A DNA stretch of 64,000 bases, taken from assembly GCF_964188315.1 (NCBI RefSeq), contig NC_135665.1, forward strand, positions 34,596,001 to 34,660,000, given 5' to 3'. A program made the translations under genes and the position numbers. The DNA is from Podarcis muralis (Eukaryota). Of the stretch, positions 18,019 to 61,277 are shown piece after piece (positions within the stretch are counted from its first letter, which is position 1; each line of letters begins with the position of its first letter). The notes under the pieces were generated by a model. The model made no database searches. It saw only the letters and a program-made list of their open reading frames with translations, and was not told the DNA's origin.

Positions 18019-18279
18019 NNNNNNNNNNNNNNNNNNNNNNNNNNNNNNNNNNNNNNNNNNNNNNNNNNNNNNNNNNNNNNNNNNNNNNNNNNNNNNNNNN
18101 NNNNNNNNNNNNNNNNNNNNNNNNNNNNNNNNNNNNNNNNNNNNNNNNNNNNNNNNNNNNNNNNNNNNNNNNNNNNNNNNNNNNNNNNNNNNNNNNNNNN
18201 NNNNNNNNNNNNNNNNNNNNNNNNNNNNNNNNNNNNNNNNNNNNNNNNNNNNNNNNNNNNNNNNNNNNNNNNNNNNNNN
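18019..18279. other. Assembly gap (261 N)
   Basis: Run of n characters. Confidence 1.
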
Positions 18280-24663: not shown

Positions 24664-25016
24664 AGGTAAAGGTAAAGGTACCCCTGCCCATACGGGCCAG
24701 TCTTGACAGACTCTAGGGTTGTGCGCCCATCTCACTCAAGAGGCTGGGGGCCAGCGCTGTCTGGAGACACTTCCGGGTCACGTGGCCAGTGTGACATCGC
24801 TGCTCTGGCGAGCACACGGAAACGCCGTTTACCTTCCCACTAGTAAGCGGTCCCTATTTATCTACTTGCACCTGGGAGTGCTTTCGAACTGCTAGGTTGG
24901 CAGGCGCTGGGACCAAGCAACGGGAGCGCACCCCGCCACGGGGATTCGAACCGCCGACCTTTCAATCAGCAAGCACTAGGCGCTGAGGCTTTTACCCACA
25001 GCGCCACCCGCGTCCC
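24664..25016 (-). mobile_element. Sauria SINE, full length, young; 164 bp upstream of the EGF3 exon
   Basis: Tail (aaaggt)n at left, head ...cccacagcgccacccgcgtccc at right; 13-bp TSD cagtgttaaaata (24651-24663, 25017-25029). Confidence 0.95.
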
Positions 25017-43215: not shown

Positions 43216-44800
43216 TGTGTGATGAGTTAAACAGTAAGTTGCATCAGACTGATCCGAGGAAAGGTGGGGGGTTTTCACTTTTGATTGGCTTGCTGGATGG
43301 AAATTCTTTGTCACTTATTAGACGAGAAAAATGGTCTGATCAGGGGTAGGGCAGAAACAAATCTGATTGGTTGAAAGGTTGGATGGACCATAAATAAGGT
43401 ACTTTTACAACTGATCAGGCTGAGTGTGTGTCTCTCTCATATATTGAGGGGGATATTGAGGATAGGGAAAGTGTAAAAGTGTAGCCTGCTTCTAAGGAGA
43501 CTTTGGAAGCCAAAAATAAGGTGAATTGAGAAATCAGGAGGTGGGAAAATGATAGAGAAGGAAGGGTAAGAAATCTTCCTCTACTTACTGATTTTTAATT
43601 GGAGATTGAAGCCTGGGCAGTTGCTTTAGATAATTTTTTTTAAAAATACACAGCGAAAAATATCAGGGAGGAAAACTATACATAATTAACTTCATGTGTT
43701 CTTTGAGCCAGAACGTTGAATAATGTTGATCAGGGCATCTGTGCTGTGATATTTTTACTCAGTAGGTGTTGGAAGACAGAAGAAAAGAAAAAAAACCTAA
43801 TTACAATGCCAGACTTCCTCTTGAGACTCATCAAGTTTTCTTTTCCCTCTGCTTTACTCCACATAGCATGTTCCCAAACAAAGTGCTTTCAATTTTTAAT
43901 GAGATGTATTGTCTTACGTTCTTTACTGAGCAAAGGAATAATGCAGACTTTTAAAAATGCCTTTAATTCACTTTGGATAAGTCCCATAAATTGTCAAAAG
44001 TATGACTTATTTTGTTCTTATTCTTATAGGATTCTTGTTGTTTCGCAGCTGAAATCTGAAAATTCTTAACTTTTCCTTTGACCGATTTTTTGTGGTAGCA
44101 TGGGTGAATGGGGAGTGTGCTCTTCAGCTTCCTTAGTGTGCAAGTTTTCTTATTAATCTTGAACCAACATAGAAATAAAACTGAAGGGTTCTTCCTGTCG
44201 CACTTGTCTTGCCAGTGCTGAGTTAAAAGCTACAAGAATACAAAACTAAGAAATGTGATGAAAAATAGAGCCATCTATTTTTGAGGTGGCTGAGATGATA
44301 ACAAATGTACAATCTTAGCTTGAGGGTAGAGAAATAGTTGCAGTCTACCAGTTGCTCCCACAGCTATATTTTGTGTCTTATTATTTGTTAAGGATTGAAA
44401 GCGTGTTTACTATCTTTATAGTTTTGCTGTGAATGCTCCAAGAAGCTCTCAAAGCAACTTGCGAAAAATTATAGCTATAAAATCCCATTAAAAGAATGAA
44501 AATATAATGCTGTTCATATGATGCTAGGATTTTACAGGCAGCAGTTCTTCCCTCATCCTTAGCCTTCCTTGGTGTTGCACTTTGGACCTCACTTACGGTA
44601 CTAGGCAGAAGGGATGACTTCAAAGTTGCTTTCTGGAACCGTGGACCAACAGTGACAGTAAGGCCCTTTGAAGCTGATTGGCCCTGAAAGTATGTCTTCA
44701 GATGAAGTTACTATGGCAGCAACCTCCTTTGAACTTTGATTGGTGGGTGGTCCTGCCCAAGTTGGCCCTTGCGGGTGGAGAAATTAAGCATCTGGTCCAC

Positions 44801-44998
44801 CAGCTGAATGCAGTTCCTCATCCCTGACCTACACTATTAGAAGGTCCTTAAGAGATCCGGAAGTCCCTGATACAGGATCTCTTAAGGACCTTCTAATAGT
44901 GTAGGTCAGGGATGAGGAACTGCAGCTGAATGCAGTTCCTCATCCCTGACCTACACTATTAGAAGGTCCTTAAGAGATCCTGTATCAGGGACTTCCGG
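44801..44998. repeat. Forward-inverted-forward micro-triplication containing a perfect 68-bp palindrome
   Basis: 44801-44858 = 44923-44980 (direct); 44857-44924 is the exact reverse complement of 44931-44998 (6-nt loop gctgaa). Confidence 0.95.
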
Positions 44999-45312
44999 AG
45001 GCGGCGCGAAACCGTGATGGCGGACCTCTTCGAGCTCTGAAGAGGGGCACCGCAGAAAAGGGTTGTTTCGCTACGGCGCAGCGGCAACCCATCAAGATAA
45101 ACCACGGACAGAGTGAGTTCGTGGCCGTGGGACTCGGCGGGCACCTGGAGCGACCCCAAATTCGCAGAAGGGACCCCGTAAGGGGCTCCGGAGTGAAGGA
45201 GGGGGAGCGGTGCTGTGAGTTCATCGCTCTTTCTGCGGAGGCGAAGCCGCGCGGCTGTCACGGATGAGCGCCGACCTTTCTTCCAAAAATACCAGCCTGA
45301 AACAGCAAACCC
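44989..45312 (+). promoter_or_regulatory. Putative L1 internal Pol II promoter (CpG-rich 5'UTR)
   Basis: Dense CpGs; ETS-like ACTTCCGG at 44991-44998; YY1-like gatggcgg at 45016-45023. Function inferred from known L1 5'UTRs. Confidence 0.5.
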
Positions 45313-45755
45313 GTGAGTAAGGATTTAAGATTTGCTAAAATAATTCGAAGAAATTTGGCTGAAACCGGGAGACGAGAAAGAGGAAGTCCGTCTTCCGGCA
45401 CTGCTTTCAACATCAAAGCAGACGGTTCAAAGAGCGGAAAGCGCTGTGAACAGGGAAGCCTTAAGGCTTTAAAGTGGGACTTTCGTGCACATTTGAATTC
45501 TATCTTTAAAGAAAAAATACAGCTAAAAATACAGCTAAAAATGGAACAAAAATTCAAAAATGGAACAAAAGGGACTTTAATGGCGGAAAAGTTACCTTCT
45601 TCTTACTAAATTTTGGTGGCACTCCCCCTAGAGGATATTGGGATAACAAAGGCCTGGGAAAAGTTTTTTCTGTTTACCTTCTCTCTCCAGACTGTTTTTA
45701 AATTTGGGCTTGTCTTTCCCATGGGATTACAACATTTGACCTTGAACATTGACTG

Positions 45756-46724
45756 ATGAGTGGCACAGGAAAGACAAGAGCAGCCAAAGCTAAGGAAGCT
45801 AAGGAAAAAGAAAAAGCGAAAAAGCAGGCACAGCTCTTGCAAACAACTTTAACTCAGGGACGCAGACTATCAGTCCCAGCTGTGCTTGCAACACAAAAAG
45901 TAGAAAGTGAAAAGCCTGAAAAATCTGAGGAGGAAGATATGGCATCAGGAGGATCAGAGGCAGTACTGAAACAAGTCTTGGAACAATTGTCAGCATTAAA
46001 CCAAAAAATTGATAACCAATCAATAAAAATTGACCAAGCTACATCCTCGATCCAAAAACTGACAGATCAGGTTTCCCAACATACCCAAGCAATTGAAAAA
46101 TTGCAAGGAGCAACAGAAGAGAATCGTAAATTGGCAGGGGAAGCCGTTCAAATTGCAACAGCAGCTAAAAAAGAGGTTGAGGAAGTCAAAGCAGAAGTCA
46201 AGCCTCTGCACAAACAGATAGGGGACCAACAAACCTACCTCTCTTTGGTGGAATTGAAAAATCGCCAGACTAACCTTAGGCTGAGGGCGGTGCCAGAAAT
46301 CGAACAAGAAGATTTGATTGGATTTTTGACAACAGAGTTTTCAAAGTTTTGGGGCCTAAAAGAAGATAGTGATTTTAAAATAGTATCGGCTTTTCGATTG
46401 GGAAGATTGGTAAGAAAAGACAGATCAAGAGACTGCTTAATAGCTTTGAGATCAAGAGAAGAGAGAGACAAAATATTAGGCCTACACTTTAATAACTCAA
46501 TTGAGATACAAGAGAAAAGGGTGGAAATTTACCGAGACATCCCTAAACAGCTACTGGATTTGAGAGCCACCTACTCAGAATTGGCCAAGCTGTTGAGACT
46601 CAACACAATTCCTTACAGGTGGGAGTTTCCACAAGGACTATCTTTTACTTACAAACAGAAGAAGGTCCCAGCTCCTGCCCACCTAGCAGTTCGAAAGCAC
46701 GTCAAAGTGCAAGTAGATAAATAG
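45756..46724 (+). CDS. LINE-1 ORF1p-like protein (coiled coil + RRM + CTD), 322 aa, last 19 aa SINE-derived
   Basis: Heptad-rich region, then ELKNRQTNLRLRAVPE (cf. L1 ORF1 ENRSRRNNLRI.G.PE), AFRLG, EIYRDIP, IPYRWEFPQGL; uninterrupted frame; VPAPAHLAVRKHVKVQVDK* is read from SINE sequence. Confidence 0.85.
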   Translation: MSGTGKTRAAKAKEAKEKEKAKKQAQLLQTTLTQGRRLSVPAVLATQKVESEKPEKSEEEDMASGGSEAVLKQVLEQLSALNQKIDNQSIKIDQATSSIQKLTDQVSQHTQAIEKLQGATEENRKLAGEAVQIATAAKKEVEEVKAEVKPLHKQIGDQQTYLSLVELKNRQTNLRLRAVPEIEQEDLIGFLTTEFSKFWGLKEDSDFKIVSAFRLGRLVRKDRSRDCLIALRSREERDKILGLHFNNSIEIQEKRVEIYRDIPKQLLDLRATYSELAKLLRLNTIPYRWEFPQGLSFTYKQKKVPAPAHLAVRKHVKVQVDK

Positions 46725-47074
46725 GTACCGCTTTATAGCGGGAAGGTAAACGGTGTTTCCGTGTGCTGCGCTGGTGCTGGCTTGCCAGAGCAGCTTCGTC
46801 ACGCTGGCCATGTGACCCGGAAGTGTCTCCGGACAGTGCTGGCCCCTGGCCTCTTAAGTGAGATGGGCGCACAACCCTAGAGTCGGACACGACTGGCCCA
46901 TACGGGCAGGGGTACCTTTACCTTTACCTAAGAGATCCTGTATCAGAAACTAATACAGACTGTCCTAGTCTGTCCAGAAATGCTCAAGACAATATATATT
47001 TGGGGGCTTGTATATAAAAAGTTGATGTATAGTTATTCCAGAACCCTGAAATATACCCCCCCCTACCCTGGATA

Positions 47075-47326
47075 AAGGTAAAGGTAAAGGTAAAGGGACC
47101 CCTGACCATTAAGGTCCAGTCACGGACGACTCTGGGGTTGTGGCGCTCATCTCACTTTATTGACCGAGGCAGCCGGCGTACAGCTTCCGGGTCATGTGGC
47201 CAGCATGACTAAGCCACTTCTGGCGAACCAGAGCAGCGCACAGAAATGCTGTTTACCTTCCCACCGGAGCGGTACCTATTTATCTACTTGCACTTTGACG
47301 TGCTTTCGAACTGCTAGGTTGGCAGG
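47075..47326 (-). mobile_element. Sauria SINE (gggacccctgacc subfamily), 5'-truncated
   Basis: (aaaggt)3 tail at left; TSD accctggata (47065-47074, 47345-47354) with 18 extra nt at the 5' junction. Confidence 0.9.
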
Positions 47327-48059
47327 AACTGCTAGGATATATAAACCCTGGATATATAAACACAAAACCAAATAAGATAATTAAAAAAGGTTAAAAACAA
47401 GTAAAAAGCTAAAAGAAATTGGAAAGAACCAAATGTTCCTGTGTATTACTTCTCTGAGCCTGTCTCCTCACTGGAACAAAGCAGCCCTTTTTAATAGCTT
47501 AATCTGAAATATTTGTACTGCTCACATTTTTTTTTTCCTGGTTGTGTATATCTCTCTGCCCTACCCCATGTTTTTAGCCCGCAAATGCTGGGAAATGGCA
47601 TAGAGGAACTTAATCATGTAAAATATATGCCAAGGAATAAAGTAATTAATATTATCCTTTTGCTAAACATAGTTAAGCTTATAATCAATACTTTGTAAAT
47701 TAAATGCAATTTAAGTGACTGCAGAATTCTGTAAAACAGGAGGCTGATTGTGGGCTTTGTATGGAAGCTGATGTTTAAACTTGCCAGTAGCTGAATAATT
47801 CATATCTTTCCATTAATAGCATTCACAGCAACTACCTTTGGGACTAAAATAATAACTTAATAAGAAGAAGAAACAAACCAAGCAAGTTTTCAGTCTGTCT
47901 AATTCTGTAAACTCTCGGAGGCATAAATTGATGTTTCCCAGCGAAAACCAAATGAGTTGAGCCCTTAGGAAAAAGGGAATAAAAAGAAAAATCAGAATTT
48001 TATGATATTTTCATTCTGAAGCAGAATAAAACATATAGGCACTGATCCAGTTCTAGCCA

Positions 48060-58526: not shown

Positions 58527-60939
58527 GTATGTTCCTGCAATACTTACAATAACAACAAAAGTCACTTTTAGCAAAAACATTATGAATTTATCTACAACTA
58601 TGTACATACTTCAAATGCCAAATATGTTTGTTTATTTACTAGAATTAGCTGGTGCTGGAGATGTTTGCGTACACCTGAAATGGTAGCCTCCCCTTATCTA
58701 CATCCCCTCCCCTCTTCTTTCTCTTCCCAAACCCCATAAATTTATATTTGATTACCATTTTGAAAGACACACACGTGGTTTTGAATTGTTTGTGTTTTAC
58801 TGCTTTTAATAACTGGGTAGCATAGAGAGGTTTATCAGGTGCATCTTCTGATACTGCAGCACTTTGAAAACTGCACCTGCCATGTCGGCATTTGCAGTCA
58901 CAGAATTCTCTGTTGGGTCACGAGTCAGTAACTTCTACTTTATGCAGCTTATTGAGACTGTAGGCTATAAGAAACTTGAGGCTTGCAAGAGTTTTCTAAC
59001 TGCATTTCCAAAACTTTCCAGGTGAAATTAGGTCTGCTGCTGAGCCTGGTTGCATTTGATGAGATTTGATTTGATTTTGTTTTGTTGCTTTCGAACAGAA
59101 TCCTTCATTGTGCCTTGTAGCAGAAGTAAATGAACTAGTGGAGCCAATATCAACCCTTTCAAAGTTTTTTGTGTGGAAGGGTCACAGCACAAAAATGTAA
59201 AGCCTGACCCAGCTCCTTTTTGCACAAAAGCTTCATTCCCTTGCAGATTCAATGAAACACATAAAACTCTCGGTTTTTTTGTCGAAGTACAAGCATTATT
59301 TTCATATGGCAACTGCTACAGTAAATTTGTTTGGAGATTATTTTTATATGACTGCCTTCTTACTGTACAAACAGCCAGCCAGGGCACTAGTAATATATCA
59401 AAGCAGCCCGTGTTACATAATTCCTGGTCCTCGAGTGACAACAAAACCAAGTTCCAAAATGAAAAGTTAATGCATTAATCTCACTGTGGCCCTCTTCCAA
59501 TACAGATAGATTCGAAAGTAAATAGAAAATTGTGTCCAGGTGCCTTGGTGTATTAGATTTTCTTCTTGTGGCGTCTCCCATCCATAGGAGCACAATTTAG
59601 AATAAGTCCTTGCCAGAATGACTAGGAATTGCTTTGCTCAAAGAACTGTGAAAGCTTCTAAGTGAATCCATTTCAGGGGCCTCATCTTGTTTCAAGGTCA
59701 TTATACCTCTGAACTGTCATGGTGCTCAGGCTCTCTAGAACAATTGCTGGAACATAAGTACAATTATGCTTAAGGATAAATGAATGTTCTTTAGCTTCTG
59801 GTGATCTAACTTTGTTTGGGATGAAAGGCAATAGAGTGTCTCAGTTCATAATAAGGCCTCTTTATTTACTTACTAAAGTTATTTCCTGTCTAAATTTATA
59901 TCCCTCAAAGGTGTGCAACACAGCTAAGGAAAATAAGATCAATGGGAATTTTAAAAACTTTTACATCCTATTGATTTCCATGGAACAAATTCTACATGGC
60001 AGTTAACTTGTAGTTTCGATTGTAAATATATATAGCAAGGAGCTATGGCCATTTCTGGCTTCCTAGTATATACATTTTCCCTTATCACTATATAACTCTT
60101 TGAAAGCACAATTTAAGACATACTTTTACAGACATGCATGTAAGAGGTTTAAGATGTACACCCACAAGCATAATATATCAAGTATTCCTCAAGAGTTCTT
60201 TACTTTGACAGAAACCTTCTCCATGCAATTAGCTTACATTTAAATTGATTTGGTTAACTATATTCGATTTATTTCTTTAATTATATTTTAAATTCATGGG
60301 CTGTTTTCTGCTACATTGTCTTCAAACAATTTACAGTAAAAAAATAAGTAAAATCATAAATCATGAAACTTCATAAATATTTAAGAAATATTATTCTGAA
60401 AACTATAGCAGTTCAGCACTGACATTTCCAAATCAACTACCAAGATAAGCTACTCAAAGAATTGGTGACGCCTTGCAGAACAAGTATGAACAAGCTGTCT
60501 GATCCATTTCAGGGGATCAGGTCTAGTGGACCCTTCTTGGAAGGAATACCACAGCAGACTTGGTATCATAAAAATGCTGTAAATATTTCTAGTAAAGGAC
60601 TTGCATCAAACCCATCTGAATGTACAGGAAAATTAAAAATCAGTCTGGAAAGCATCTGGAAGCTTATTTAAATAGAAACACAATAAGTTTCCATGCTGAA
60701 GCCGTTTTCAGAAGCACTTCTCTAAAAATTGTAATAATTTGGCAGCTAGAAGTAGGGCCAAGCCCAGTAGTTCTGCCCTTGCCATCACAAAGGCTTCCCA
60801 GTTGCAGGCATTCAAGCTGTATGTGCAGTCACCAAGGGTCAGGGAAGCCAGAGGGATTGTTGTCAGAGGCAAGGTTAGTTGGTGTGGCCCCACGAATCTG
60901 ATAGTATAATCTGTGAGTGGTACATCTGAAGGGTGCTTG

Positions 60940-61277
60940 GTAAAGGTAAAGGGACCCCTAACCATTAGGTCCAGTCGTGACTGACTCTGGGGTTGCGGCA
61001 CTCATCTTGCTTTATTGGCCGAGGGAGCCGGCGTACAGGTTCCGGGTCATGTGGCCAGCATCACTAATCCGCTTCTGGCGAACCAGAGCAGTGCACGGAA
61101 ATGCCGTTTACCTTCCCGCCAGAGCGGTACCTATTTATCTACTTGCACTTTGATGTGCTTTCGAACTGCTAGGTTGGCAGGAGCAGGGACCAAGCAACAG
61201 GAGCTCACCCCGTCGCGGGGATTCAAACCGCTGGCCTTCTGATTGGCAAGTCCTAGGCTCTGTGGTTTAACCCACAA
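60940..61277 (-). mobile_element. Sauria SINE (gggacccct subfamily), near full length
   Basis: gtaaaggtaaagggacccct tail; core gcggtacctatttatctacttgcac; head truncated near cccaca; possible 6-bp TSD tgcttg. Confidence 0.9.

What the first reader, a model, noticed from the sequence alone, without database searches (positions are those of the whole stretch)
44971..46946. L1-promoter/ORF1 + Sauria SINE chimera inserted as one unit: candidate new composite retroelement
One 18-bp TSD encloses an apparently complete L1 5' end (767-bp CpG-rich UTR starting ggacttccgg), an open ORF1 and, from 46664, the 3' 265 bp of a Sauria SINE lacking its tRNA head. There is no ORF2 and no poly(A); the element ends in the SINE ACCTTT tail. 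Priming is therefore inferred to have used the SINE end, i.e. RTE/BovB rather than L1 machinery, with reverse transcription running about 1.9 kb to the L1 5' end. The fusion is in frame: ORF1 keeps coiled coil, RRM and most of the CTD and gains a 19-aa SINE-encoded tail and stop. Either a one-off cross-clade template switch, or a member of an amplifying non-autonomous family with a Pol II promoter, its own RNA chaperone and a borrowed RTE recognition end.
Basis: partly seen in the sequence, partly recalled or inferred. Interest (0 to 1): 0.85.

Follow-up and report, generated by a model that had tools for sequence, protein, structure and literature searches.

The report
One-off L1–SINE chimeric retrocopy in a lizard
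A very young insertion, absent from at least one other individual, joins the front third of an active L1 element to the rear of a Sauria SINE, most likely because the SINE's partner reverse transcriptase hopped from one RNA to another; it looks like a single accident, not a new family of jumping genes.

Summary
A perfect 18-bp target-site duplication (44971-88 and 46929-46) encloses a 1,940-bp unit. The unit is an L1 5'UTR (767 nt, CpG-rich), an open L1-type ORF1 cut at codon 304, and the last 265 nt of a Sauria SINE that lacks its tRNA head and ends in (ACCTTT)n with no poly(A).

A contig from another individual (X2) joins 44848 directly to 46929. So the empty site holds one 18-mer, and the whole unit went in as one event and is polymorphic.

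The L1 part matches contigs of a few dozen near-identical L1 copies. The L1/SINE junction shares 3 nt (GGT). No public run was listed as holding junction-spanning words, although 20 runs from 7 studies hold the parts.

The TSD starts with TA, as published for Sauria SINE/Bov-B insertions.

Best reading: Bov-B-type target-primed reverse transcription began on a SINE 3' end, jumped to an L1 mRNA and ran to its 5' end. It then made a snap-back triplication of the flank (44801-44999).

The "amplifying composite family" reading is not supported. The scan has not noted this junction on other DNA. ORF1p loses the end of its last strand, its last helix and its tail, so a working chaperone is doubtful.

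The parts
44801..44858 (+). Copy A of the left flank, running 10 nt into the target 18-mer. The empty allele continues from 44848 straight into the 18-mer.
   Evidence: 58 nt, 100% identical to 44923-44980. X2 contig 9.
44856..44924 (-). Inverted copy B. It is the exact reverse complement of 44931-44999, that is 40 nt of flank, the 18-mer and L1 nt 1-11. It overlaps A by TCC and C by CA.
   Evidence: 69-nt arms, 100% complementary, 6-nt spacer; inverted 18-mer at 44867-44884.
44923..44970 (+). Copy C of the left flank, leading into the 5' TSD.
44971..44988 (+). 5' copy of the 18-bp target-site duplication, TAAGAGATCCTGTATCAG.
44989..45755 (+). L1 5'UTR, 767 nt, starting GGACTTCCGG. The first ~500 nt are CpG-island-like. 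It is the presumed internal Pol II promoter; promoter function was not tested.
   Evidence: CpG o/e 0.8-1.2; contigs with 0 differences at about 50 times single-copy depth.
45756..46724 (+). Chimeric ORF of 322 aa. Residues 1-304 are L1 ORF1p (N-terminal region, coiled coil, RRM and 62% of the CTD). Residues 305-322 and the stop come from the SINE.
46664..46666 (+). GGT shared by the parental L1 (which continues GGT-TAAAATAAGAAC) and the SINE (GGT-CCCAGC). This is the microhomology at the template switch.
   Evidence: loose ends at 46666 (L1 continuation) and at 46664 (SINE head)..
46664..46928 (+). The 3' 265 nt of a Sauria SINE: the tRNA-unrelated body plus the LINE-derived 3' region. The tRNA-like head with the Pol III A and B boxes is absent.
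   Evidence: PMC13295347.
46913..46928 (+). (ACCTTT)n microsatellite tail, abutting the TSD. There is no poly(A).
   Evidence: Sauria SINEs end in (ACCTTT)n.
46929..46946 (+). 3' copy of the 18-bp TSD.

Best explanation
This is a single, very recent and still polymorphic chimeric retrocopy.

1. The reverse transcriptase that mobilises Sauria SINEs nicked the target at a T/TA site. By published inference that enzyme is the Bov-B/RTE-clade LINE enzyme.
2. It began target-primed reverse transcription on the (ACCTTT)n end of a SINE-containing RNA and copied 265 nt, up to the edge of the tRNA-like head.
3. It then switched template, using 3 nt of microhomology (GGT), onto an L1 mRNA inside ORF1. 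It copied 1,675 nt to, or very near, the L1 5' end.
4. The cDNA end then ran on into the upstream target strand, snapped back on itself and rejoined. This left a direct-inverted-direct triplication of the flank.

The product has an L1 CpG-island 5'UTR, a C-terminally damaged ORF1 and a Bov-B-type tail. There is no sign that it has been copied again.

Shown: the single event, the empty allele, the identity of the parts, the microhomologies, and the lack of the junction in any listed run.
Inferred: which enzyme did it, and the order of the jumps.
For: One event:
- A perfect 18-bp TSD, with 0.01 matches expected by chance.
- X2 contig 9 (depth 6.45) runs 44400-44848 and then directly 46929-47090. 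The empty allele therefore has one 18-mer and one copy of the flank.

Young:
- The TSD and the 69-nt inverted arms are 100% identical.
- The ORF is intact and the CpGs are undecayed.
- L1 contigs with 0-1 differences stand at depth 301-402, against 6.45 for single-copy sequence, so the parental L1 has a few dozen near-identical copies.

Parts:
- The model of the closest full-length relative, P0001 (84% identity), matches the human L1 ORF1p trimer 2ykq with E 4e-10 and TMt 0.70.
- phmmer aligns residues 133-298 to 2ykp.

Junction:
- L1 copies continue TAAAATAAGAAC after 46666, and SINE copies carry the head before 46664, so GGT is shared.

Enzyme:
- The unit ends in (ACCTTT)n with no poly(A).
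- Sauria SINEs share their 3' end with Bov-B, end in (ACCTTT)n, and have TSDs that start with the T of TA (PMC13295347).
- This TSD and 3 of the 5 other SINE TSDs in the window start with TA.
- A neighbouring SINE (47082-47331) is truncated 5 nt from the same internal point, so cDNA synthesis can end there.

One-off:
- The junction-only query listed 0 runs, against 20 holders for the parts.

Precedent:
- 'Extra template' and 'snap-back' 5' junctions are described for R2-protein insertions (PMC11331408).
- L1 and MGL chimeric retrocopies made by template switching are known.
Against: - No read from the assembled individual was available, so the internal junction and the triplication rest on the assembly alone.
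- 3 nt of microhomology is weak evidence; I estimate about a 6% chance at a random join.
- The target CCT/TAAG or CCTT/AAG is also not far from an L1 endonuclease site, so the site does not name the enzyme on its own. The upstream T-run of the Tn-TA signature is only partly present (TATT at -14 to -11).
- The SINE part differs from the majority SINE letter at 6 or more CpG sites (table 3). Its template therefore came from an aged genomic copy, perhaps embedded in a longer transcript.
- Whether 44989 is the true L1 5' end could not be checked against other full-length copies.
Confidence: 0.7

Rival explanations
1. A pre-formed chimeric transcript. Somewhere in the genome an L1 copy carries a headless SINE nested in ORF1, or an L1-to-SINE deletion. 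The L1 promoter transcribes through it, and the Bov-B enzyme starts at the SINE tail and copies the RNA without any template switch.
For: - The SINE part looks like an aged genomic copy, with CpG-to-TpG differences, as expected for a SINE embedded in another transcript.
- Bov-B-type enzymes must in any case start at a tail that is internal to read-through RNAs (inference).
- Headless SINE insertions exist; 47082-47331 is one.
Against: - No listed run holds any junction-spanning word, although the same runs hold the L1 and SINE parts. A fixed source locus should be present in all of them.
- This route needs more steps than a template switch.
Confidence: 0.15
2. A member of an amplifying composite non-autonomous family, analogous to SVA or LAVA. 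It would combine an L1 Pol II promoter, an ORF1 and a Bov-B recognition end.
For: The anatomy has the parts such an element would need, a promoter end and an RT-recognition end. The insertion is young.
Against: - The junction words are in no listed run.
- There is no second copy in the window.
- The protein collection holds no fusion protein; the best hit is a normal 359-aa ORF1 at 84% identity.
- No note of the same architecture appears in 732 scanned windows of this genome. This last point is weak.
Confidence: 0.04
3. The L1 machinery, not Bov-B, integrated the chimera.
For: - Read with a 17-bp TSD, the nick site is 5'-TCTT/AAGG on the bottom strand, close to L1 endonuclease sites (established knowledge, inference).
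- An 18-bp TSD is longer than the 10-13 bp of the other SINEs in the window.
Against: - There is no poly(A); the unit ends exactly in the SINE (ACCTTT)n tail, like ordinary Sauria SINE copies.
- The TA start matches the SINE signature.
Confidence: 0.05
4. An assembly artefact or a DNA-level rearrangement created the internal junction or the triplication.
For: No independent read support was obtained for 46663/46664 or for 44858/44924. The junction was found in no listed run.
Against: - An artefact does not create a perfect 18-bp TSD around a unit whose ends are an L1 5' end and a SINE tail, nor an empty allele with exactly one 18-mer.
- All three breakpoints have 2-3 nt of microhomology.
Confidence: 0.04

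Closest known systems
L1 chimeric insertions and chimeric retrogenes: U6/L1 and Alu/L1 (bioRxiv 10.1101/2025.02.02.635956), and MGL LINE tripartite pseudogenes (PMC2104539)
   Same: Two RNAs are copied into one insertion in the same orientation, enclosed by one TSD. The 3' segment belongs to the system whose RT did the work. A template switch is among the mechanisms those papers propose.
   Different: There the L1 is the 3' driver segment and ends in poly(A). Here L1 is the captured 5' passenger, and the 3' driver segment is a SINE tail of the RTE/Bov-B system, so the event crosses LINE clades. The switch runs from an internal point of one RNA to an internal point of the other.
'Extra template' and 'snap-back' 5' junctions of R2-protein-mediated insertions (PMC11331408, PMC11371274)
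   Same: The cDNA 3' end is extended on a second RNA, or on nearby DNA or itself, leaving reverse-complemented local sequence at the 5' junction.
   Different: Those are engineered R2 insertions in human cells. This is a natural germline, or at least assembled, allele in a lizard. Both features occur in one event, and the presumed enzyme is of the RTE clade.
Chimeric L1-BovB element of cattle (PMC6036668)
   Same: Parts of L1 and of the Bov-B system lie in one element, in a genome where both are active.
   Different: The authors explain the cattle element as an L1 inserting into a Bov-B, a nested DNA-level event, and it carries two RT domains. Here there is no RT at all, and one TSD shows an RNA-level fusion.
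Composite non-autonomous retrotransposons (SVA, LAVA) and the template-switch model of SINE birth
   Same: A borrowed promoter-bearing 5' module is joined to a LINE-recognised 3' module.
   Different: Those are families with many copies. Here only one copy is in evidence.

Membership tests
L1 (ORF1p of the coiled-coil/RRM/CTD type) | ORF1p with a coiled coil, an RRM and a CTD that fold like L1 ORF1p | tested here: met
   The AF2 model of the closest full-length relative, P0001 (84% identity), matches the human L1 ORF1p trimer 2ykq/2ykp with E 4e-10 and TMt 0.70. phmmer aligns residues 133-298 of the ORF to 2ykp, including NLRLxxVPE. One relative is named 'L1 transposable element RRM domain-co…' (name cut off in the output) by UniRef.
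L1 (ORF1p of the coiled-coil/RRM/CTD type) | Pfam Transposase_22 or related profile hit | tested here: not met
   No hit for this ORF or for five lizard relatives, even at E 1-10. I read this as a limit of profile sensitivity, since the fold test is met.
L1 (ORF1p of the coiled-coil/RRM/CTD type) | ORF2 with APE endonuclease and RT, a 3'UTR and an A-rich tail | tested here: not met
   All are absent from this copy. The sequence passes from ORF1 codon 304 into the SINE. It is therefore an L1-derived fragment, not an L1 element.
Sauria SINE | tRNA-unrelated body plus a LINE-derived 3' region ending in (ACCTTT)n | tested here: met
   The part aligns at 78-87% identity to SINE copies in the window over 265 nt and ends ACCTTTACCTTTACC. 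The published tail is in PMC13295347.
Sauria SINE | tRNA-related head with Pol III A and B boxes | tested here: not met
   The head is present in the full-length copies of the window and absent here, where the SINE part starts about 95 nt in. This is a 5'-truncated SINE segment.
Bov-B/RTE-mediated insertion | Tn-TA target signature: the TSD of the SINE starts with the T of TA, with a T-run about 10 nt upstream | tested here: inconclusive
   The TSD starts TA, as do 3 of the 5 other SINE TSDs in the window. Upstream there is only TATT at -14 to -11. One site cannot establish a signature.
Single-event chimeric retrocopy (template switch) | One TSD around both parts, same orientation, no tail or TSD between them, and an empty allele with one target copy | tested here: met
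   The junction has 3 nt of microhomology.
Composite retrotransposon family (SVA/LAVA-like) | Several loci with the same internal junction and different TSDs | tested here: not met
   The junction-only query listed no run. There is no second copy in the window and no fusion protein in the collection. The whole assembly could not be searched.

The most novel reading that the evidence does not exclude
The insertion is the founder copy, or a very rare member, of a new composite non-autonomous element. An L1 CpG-island Pol II promoter would drive an RNA that ends in a Bov-B recognition tail, and the Bov-B enzyme could then copy it again. That would be the birth of an SVA-like family caught at copy number one. 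The three microhomology jumps would also record how an RTE-clade enzyme finishes the 5' end of an insertion.
Probability: 0.07. Interest if true: 0.8.

Novelty: new variant of a known kind. Interest (0 to 1): 0.4.

Why it matters
- The SINE/Bov-B retrotransposition machinery and a young L1 subfamily appear to be active at the same time in this lacertid genome, because the insertion is still polymorphic.
- It is a natural example of a reverse transcriptase started on an RTE-type tail capturing an RNA of another LINE clade. That is the kind of event assumed in models for the birth of SINEs and composite elements, and it is mostly documented for L1.
- The same allele also keeps a snap-back triplication, which bears on how 5' junctions are resolved.
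- It remains one locus, with no evidence of further spread and a damaged ORF1. Its value is as a mechanistic snapshot, not as a new element class.

Tried and rejected
- **Pfam.** Scans of the ORF, of its C-terminal half and of five relatives gave only coiled-coil noise and no Transposase_22.
- **Scan notes by words.** These gave related but different chimeras and none with this architecture.
- **Junction-only run search.** No run was listed. This means 'none was listed', not 'none exists'.
- **Splicing as the joiner.** Rejected. Whichever way the shared GGT is assigned, no intron starting with GT and ending with AG can be drawn; the SINE side reads ...GTTGCTC before GGT.
- **Cleavage at the tRNA-like head by tRNA-processing enzymes, then RNA ligation.** Not favoured. 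The junction lies about 20 nt downstream of where a tRNA-like domain would end (inference).
- **Twin priming.** Rejected, because both parts have the same orientation.
- **L1 3' transduction.** Rejected, because there is no L1 3' end and no poly(A).
- **X7 heterozygosity.** The X7 contig break exactly at 46929 could hint at a second allele. X7 has zero depth on 44855-44945 and was not listed for the junction, so I do not read it as a carrier.
- **Mosaic SINE part.** The first 69 nt are closest to one SINE type (96%) and the last 128 nt to another (about 90%). With five comparison copies this is too weak to call a fourth jump.
- **RNA run X23.** It shows sense-strand reads from related L1 copies, but all differ from this copy at several sites. 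Expression of this locus or of its exact parent is not shown.

Full report
**What is in the sequence**

The 18-mer TAAGAGATCCTGTATCAG stands at 44971-44988 and at 46929-46946. A third, inverted copy lies at 44867-44884. About 0.01 matches are expected by chance in the window.

Between the two direct copies lie 1,940 bp (44989-46928):
- **5'UTR.** A 767-nt leader starts GGACTTCCGG. Its first ~500 nt have GC 0.41-0.64 and CpG observed/expected of 0.8-1.2, against 0.31 in the flank.
- **ORF.** An ORF of 322 codons runs from 45756 to 46724. It is the longest in the 64-kb window.
- **SINE part.** From 46664 onward the sequence is SINE.

Blast of the unit against the window finds six other SINE copies. 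All start to match at unit positions 1694-1699. In the alignment, the full-length copies carry a further ~95 nt of tRNA-like head with A and B boxes, which is missing here.

The unit ends ...GGGGTACCTTTACCTTTACC directly at the TSD. There is no ORF2 and no poly(A).

**Identity of the ORF**

Pfam finds nothing but coiled-coil noise for this protein and for its lizard relatives. Other evidence identifies it:
- phmmer against the PDB aligns residues 133-298 with human L1 ORF1p (2ykp), weakly at E 0.08, including the NLRLxxVPE start of the RRM.
- The large protein search returns 18 relatives. The best is a 359-aa protein at 84% identity. Others come from Podarcis muralis and P. lilfordi, and UniRef gives one of them a name that begins 'L1 transposable element RRM domain-co' and is cut off in the output.
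- An AlphaFold model of the 359-aa relative (pLDDT 73.6) shows a long coiled coil (67-169), an RRM (173-260) and a CTD (264-329).
- Foldseek places the model on the human L1 ORF1p trimer, with E 4e-10 and TMt 0.70.

The ORF is therefore L1-type. The alignment shows where it is cut. Relatives continue ...KQKKV-KIRTPEDSQKFL... for 55 more residues. The chimera thus loses two residues of the last strand (302-306), the last helix (309-329) and the disordered tail. It keeps 41 of 66 CTD residues. The SINE supplies 18 residues and the stop, and Val304 is encoded by the shared GGT.

**One event, still polymorphic**

Public-run contigs were laid on 44400-47100.
- In run X2 one contig (record 9, 1,973 nt, depth 6.45) covers 44400-44848 and then, without a break, 46929-47090. 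This is the empty site. It has one 18-mer, one copy of the flank, no L1 and no SINE.
- Run X7 has the same left-flank contig ending 30 letters past 44848. It has zero depth on 44855-44945.

The L1 part and the SINE part are absent together.

The parental L1 is young and abundant. Contigs with 0-1 differences from this copy stand at depth 301-402 in X2, against 6.45 for single-copy flank. That suggests roughly a few dozen near-identical copies (the tool warns that depth is not a copy number).

**The junction**

Loose ends show what the two parents do at this point.
- L1 copies continue after 46666 with TAAAATAAGAAC.
- SINE copies carry ...GAGCTCCCGTTGCTC before 46664.

GGT (46664-46666) therefore belongs to both parents, giving 3 nt of microhomology. 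No arrangement of the junction gives GT...AG intron ends, so splicing is unlikely.

**Family or one-off**

A 60-nt query in which every 31-mer spans the junction had 4 sampled words and listed no run. The 2.4-kb query listed 20 holders of the same organism from 7 studies.

Other negative results point the same way. The window has no second copy. The protein collection has no fusion protein. Notes from 732 windows of this genome mention other chimeras, such as an inverted SINE tail on a truncated L1 and an EIF2S3-CR1 fusion, but not this architecture (these notes are unchecked).

I conclude that this is a one-off, or at most extremely rare. The same result argues against a fixed source locus.

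**Which enzyme**

Nakatsuka and Ohshima (PMC13295347) report three relevant things:
- Sauria SINEs share their 3' end with Bov-B LINEs.
- They end in (ACCTTT)n.
- Their TSDs begin with the T of a TA, about 10 nt downstream of a T-run.

Here the tail is (ACCTTT)n and the TSD begins TA. Three of the five other SINE TSDs in the window also begin TA. The upstream T-run is only partial (TATT). The site could also pass for a weak L1 endonuclease site. The stronger argument is therefore the exact SINE tail without poly(A).

A neighbouring SINE (47082-47331, minus strand) is truncated 5 nt from the same internal point. cDNA synthesis can thus end at the border of the structured head, and that is a plausible place for a jump.

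**The 5' junction**

The region 44801-44999 reads A (flank plus 10 nt of the 18-mer), then B (the exact reverse complement of 44931-44999, that is flank, 18-mer and L1 nt 1-11), then C (flank, 18-mer, L1). Everything is 100% identical. A and B overlap by TCC, and B and C overlap by CA.

B contains L1 nt 1-11, and the empty allele has a single flank. The triplication therefore arose with or after the insertion.

A coherent model, inferred and not shown:
1. The cDNA, on reaching the RNA 5' end, continued on the upstream top strand for 66 nt.
2. It snapped back with a 6-nt loop and copied itself up to L1 nt 11.
3. It returned to the top strand at 18-mer position 10.
4. An 8-nt flap was then removed.

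'Snap-back' and 'extra template' 5' junctions are described categories for R2-protein insertions (PMC11331408). Both would be present here in one natural event.

**Comparison and verdict**

Chimeric retrocopies made by template switching are well known for L1 (U6/L1 and Alu/L1) and for a fungal LINE (PMC2104539). In those cases the LINE's own 3' end is the driver segment.

Here the driver end is an RTE-type SINE tail, and the captured 5' segment is the promoter-ORF1 part of an L1, so the event crosses LINE clades. The cattle L1-BovB chimera (PMC6036668) is explained by its authors as a nested DNA insertion and is not comparable in mechanism.

I file this as a new variant of a known kind. It is real, clean and mechanistically informative, but it is a single locus.

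**Limits**

- No read of the assembled individual was seen.
- The full assembly could not be searched.
- The true 5' end of the L1 subfamily was not verified.
- The enzyme assignment is by inference.

Noticed in passing
window 44801-44999: Direct-inverted-direct triplication of the left flank. The 69-nt arms are 100% complementary with a 6-nt spacer, and the inverted copy includes the 18-mer and L1 nt 1-11. The breakpoints share TCC and CA. It is absent from the empty allele in run X2. It was also noted separately by the scan (s1-153131).
   Followed up: partly
window 47082-47331 (minus strand): A second headless Sauria SINE lies 135 bp downstream, in the opposite orientation. It is truncated 5 nt from the same internal position as the chimera's SINE part and has its own 10-bp TSD, TATCCAGGGT. 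Its first 64 nt are 97% complementary to 46669-46732, so the two form a long-range inverted repeat.
   Followed up: partly
window 46664-46928: The SINE part looks mosaic against the five copies in the window. The first 69 nt are closest to the 60939-61191 copy (96%). The last 128 nt are closest to the 24664-24914 and 53913-54168 copies (about 90%, against about 60% for the first type). This could be a real subfamily or a further template switch. The part also differs from the majority SINE letter at 6 or more CpG sites.
   Followed up: partly
window 45313-45691: The L1 5'UTR contains a good splice-donor-like site (CCC|GTGAGTAAGG at about 45313) and a polypyrimidine tract with CAG (TTACCTTCTCTCTCCAG at about 45691). 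Other notes of this scan propose an intron in L1 5'UTRs of this genome. No RNA joint was listed here.
   Followed up: no
window 45192-45375: DNA contigs of other L1 copies skip 64-90 nt in the 5'UTR (joints 45192>45265, 45284>45349 and 45284>45375). This indicates length variants of the leader among copies of the family.
   Followed up: no
window 18019-18279: A run of 261 N, either an assembly gap or masked. Left untouched.
   Followed up: no
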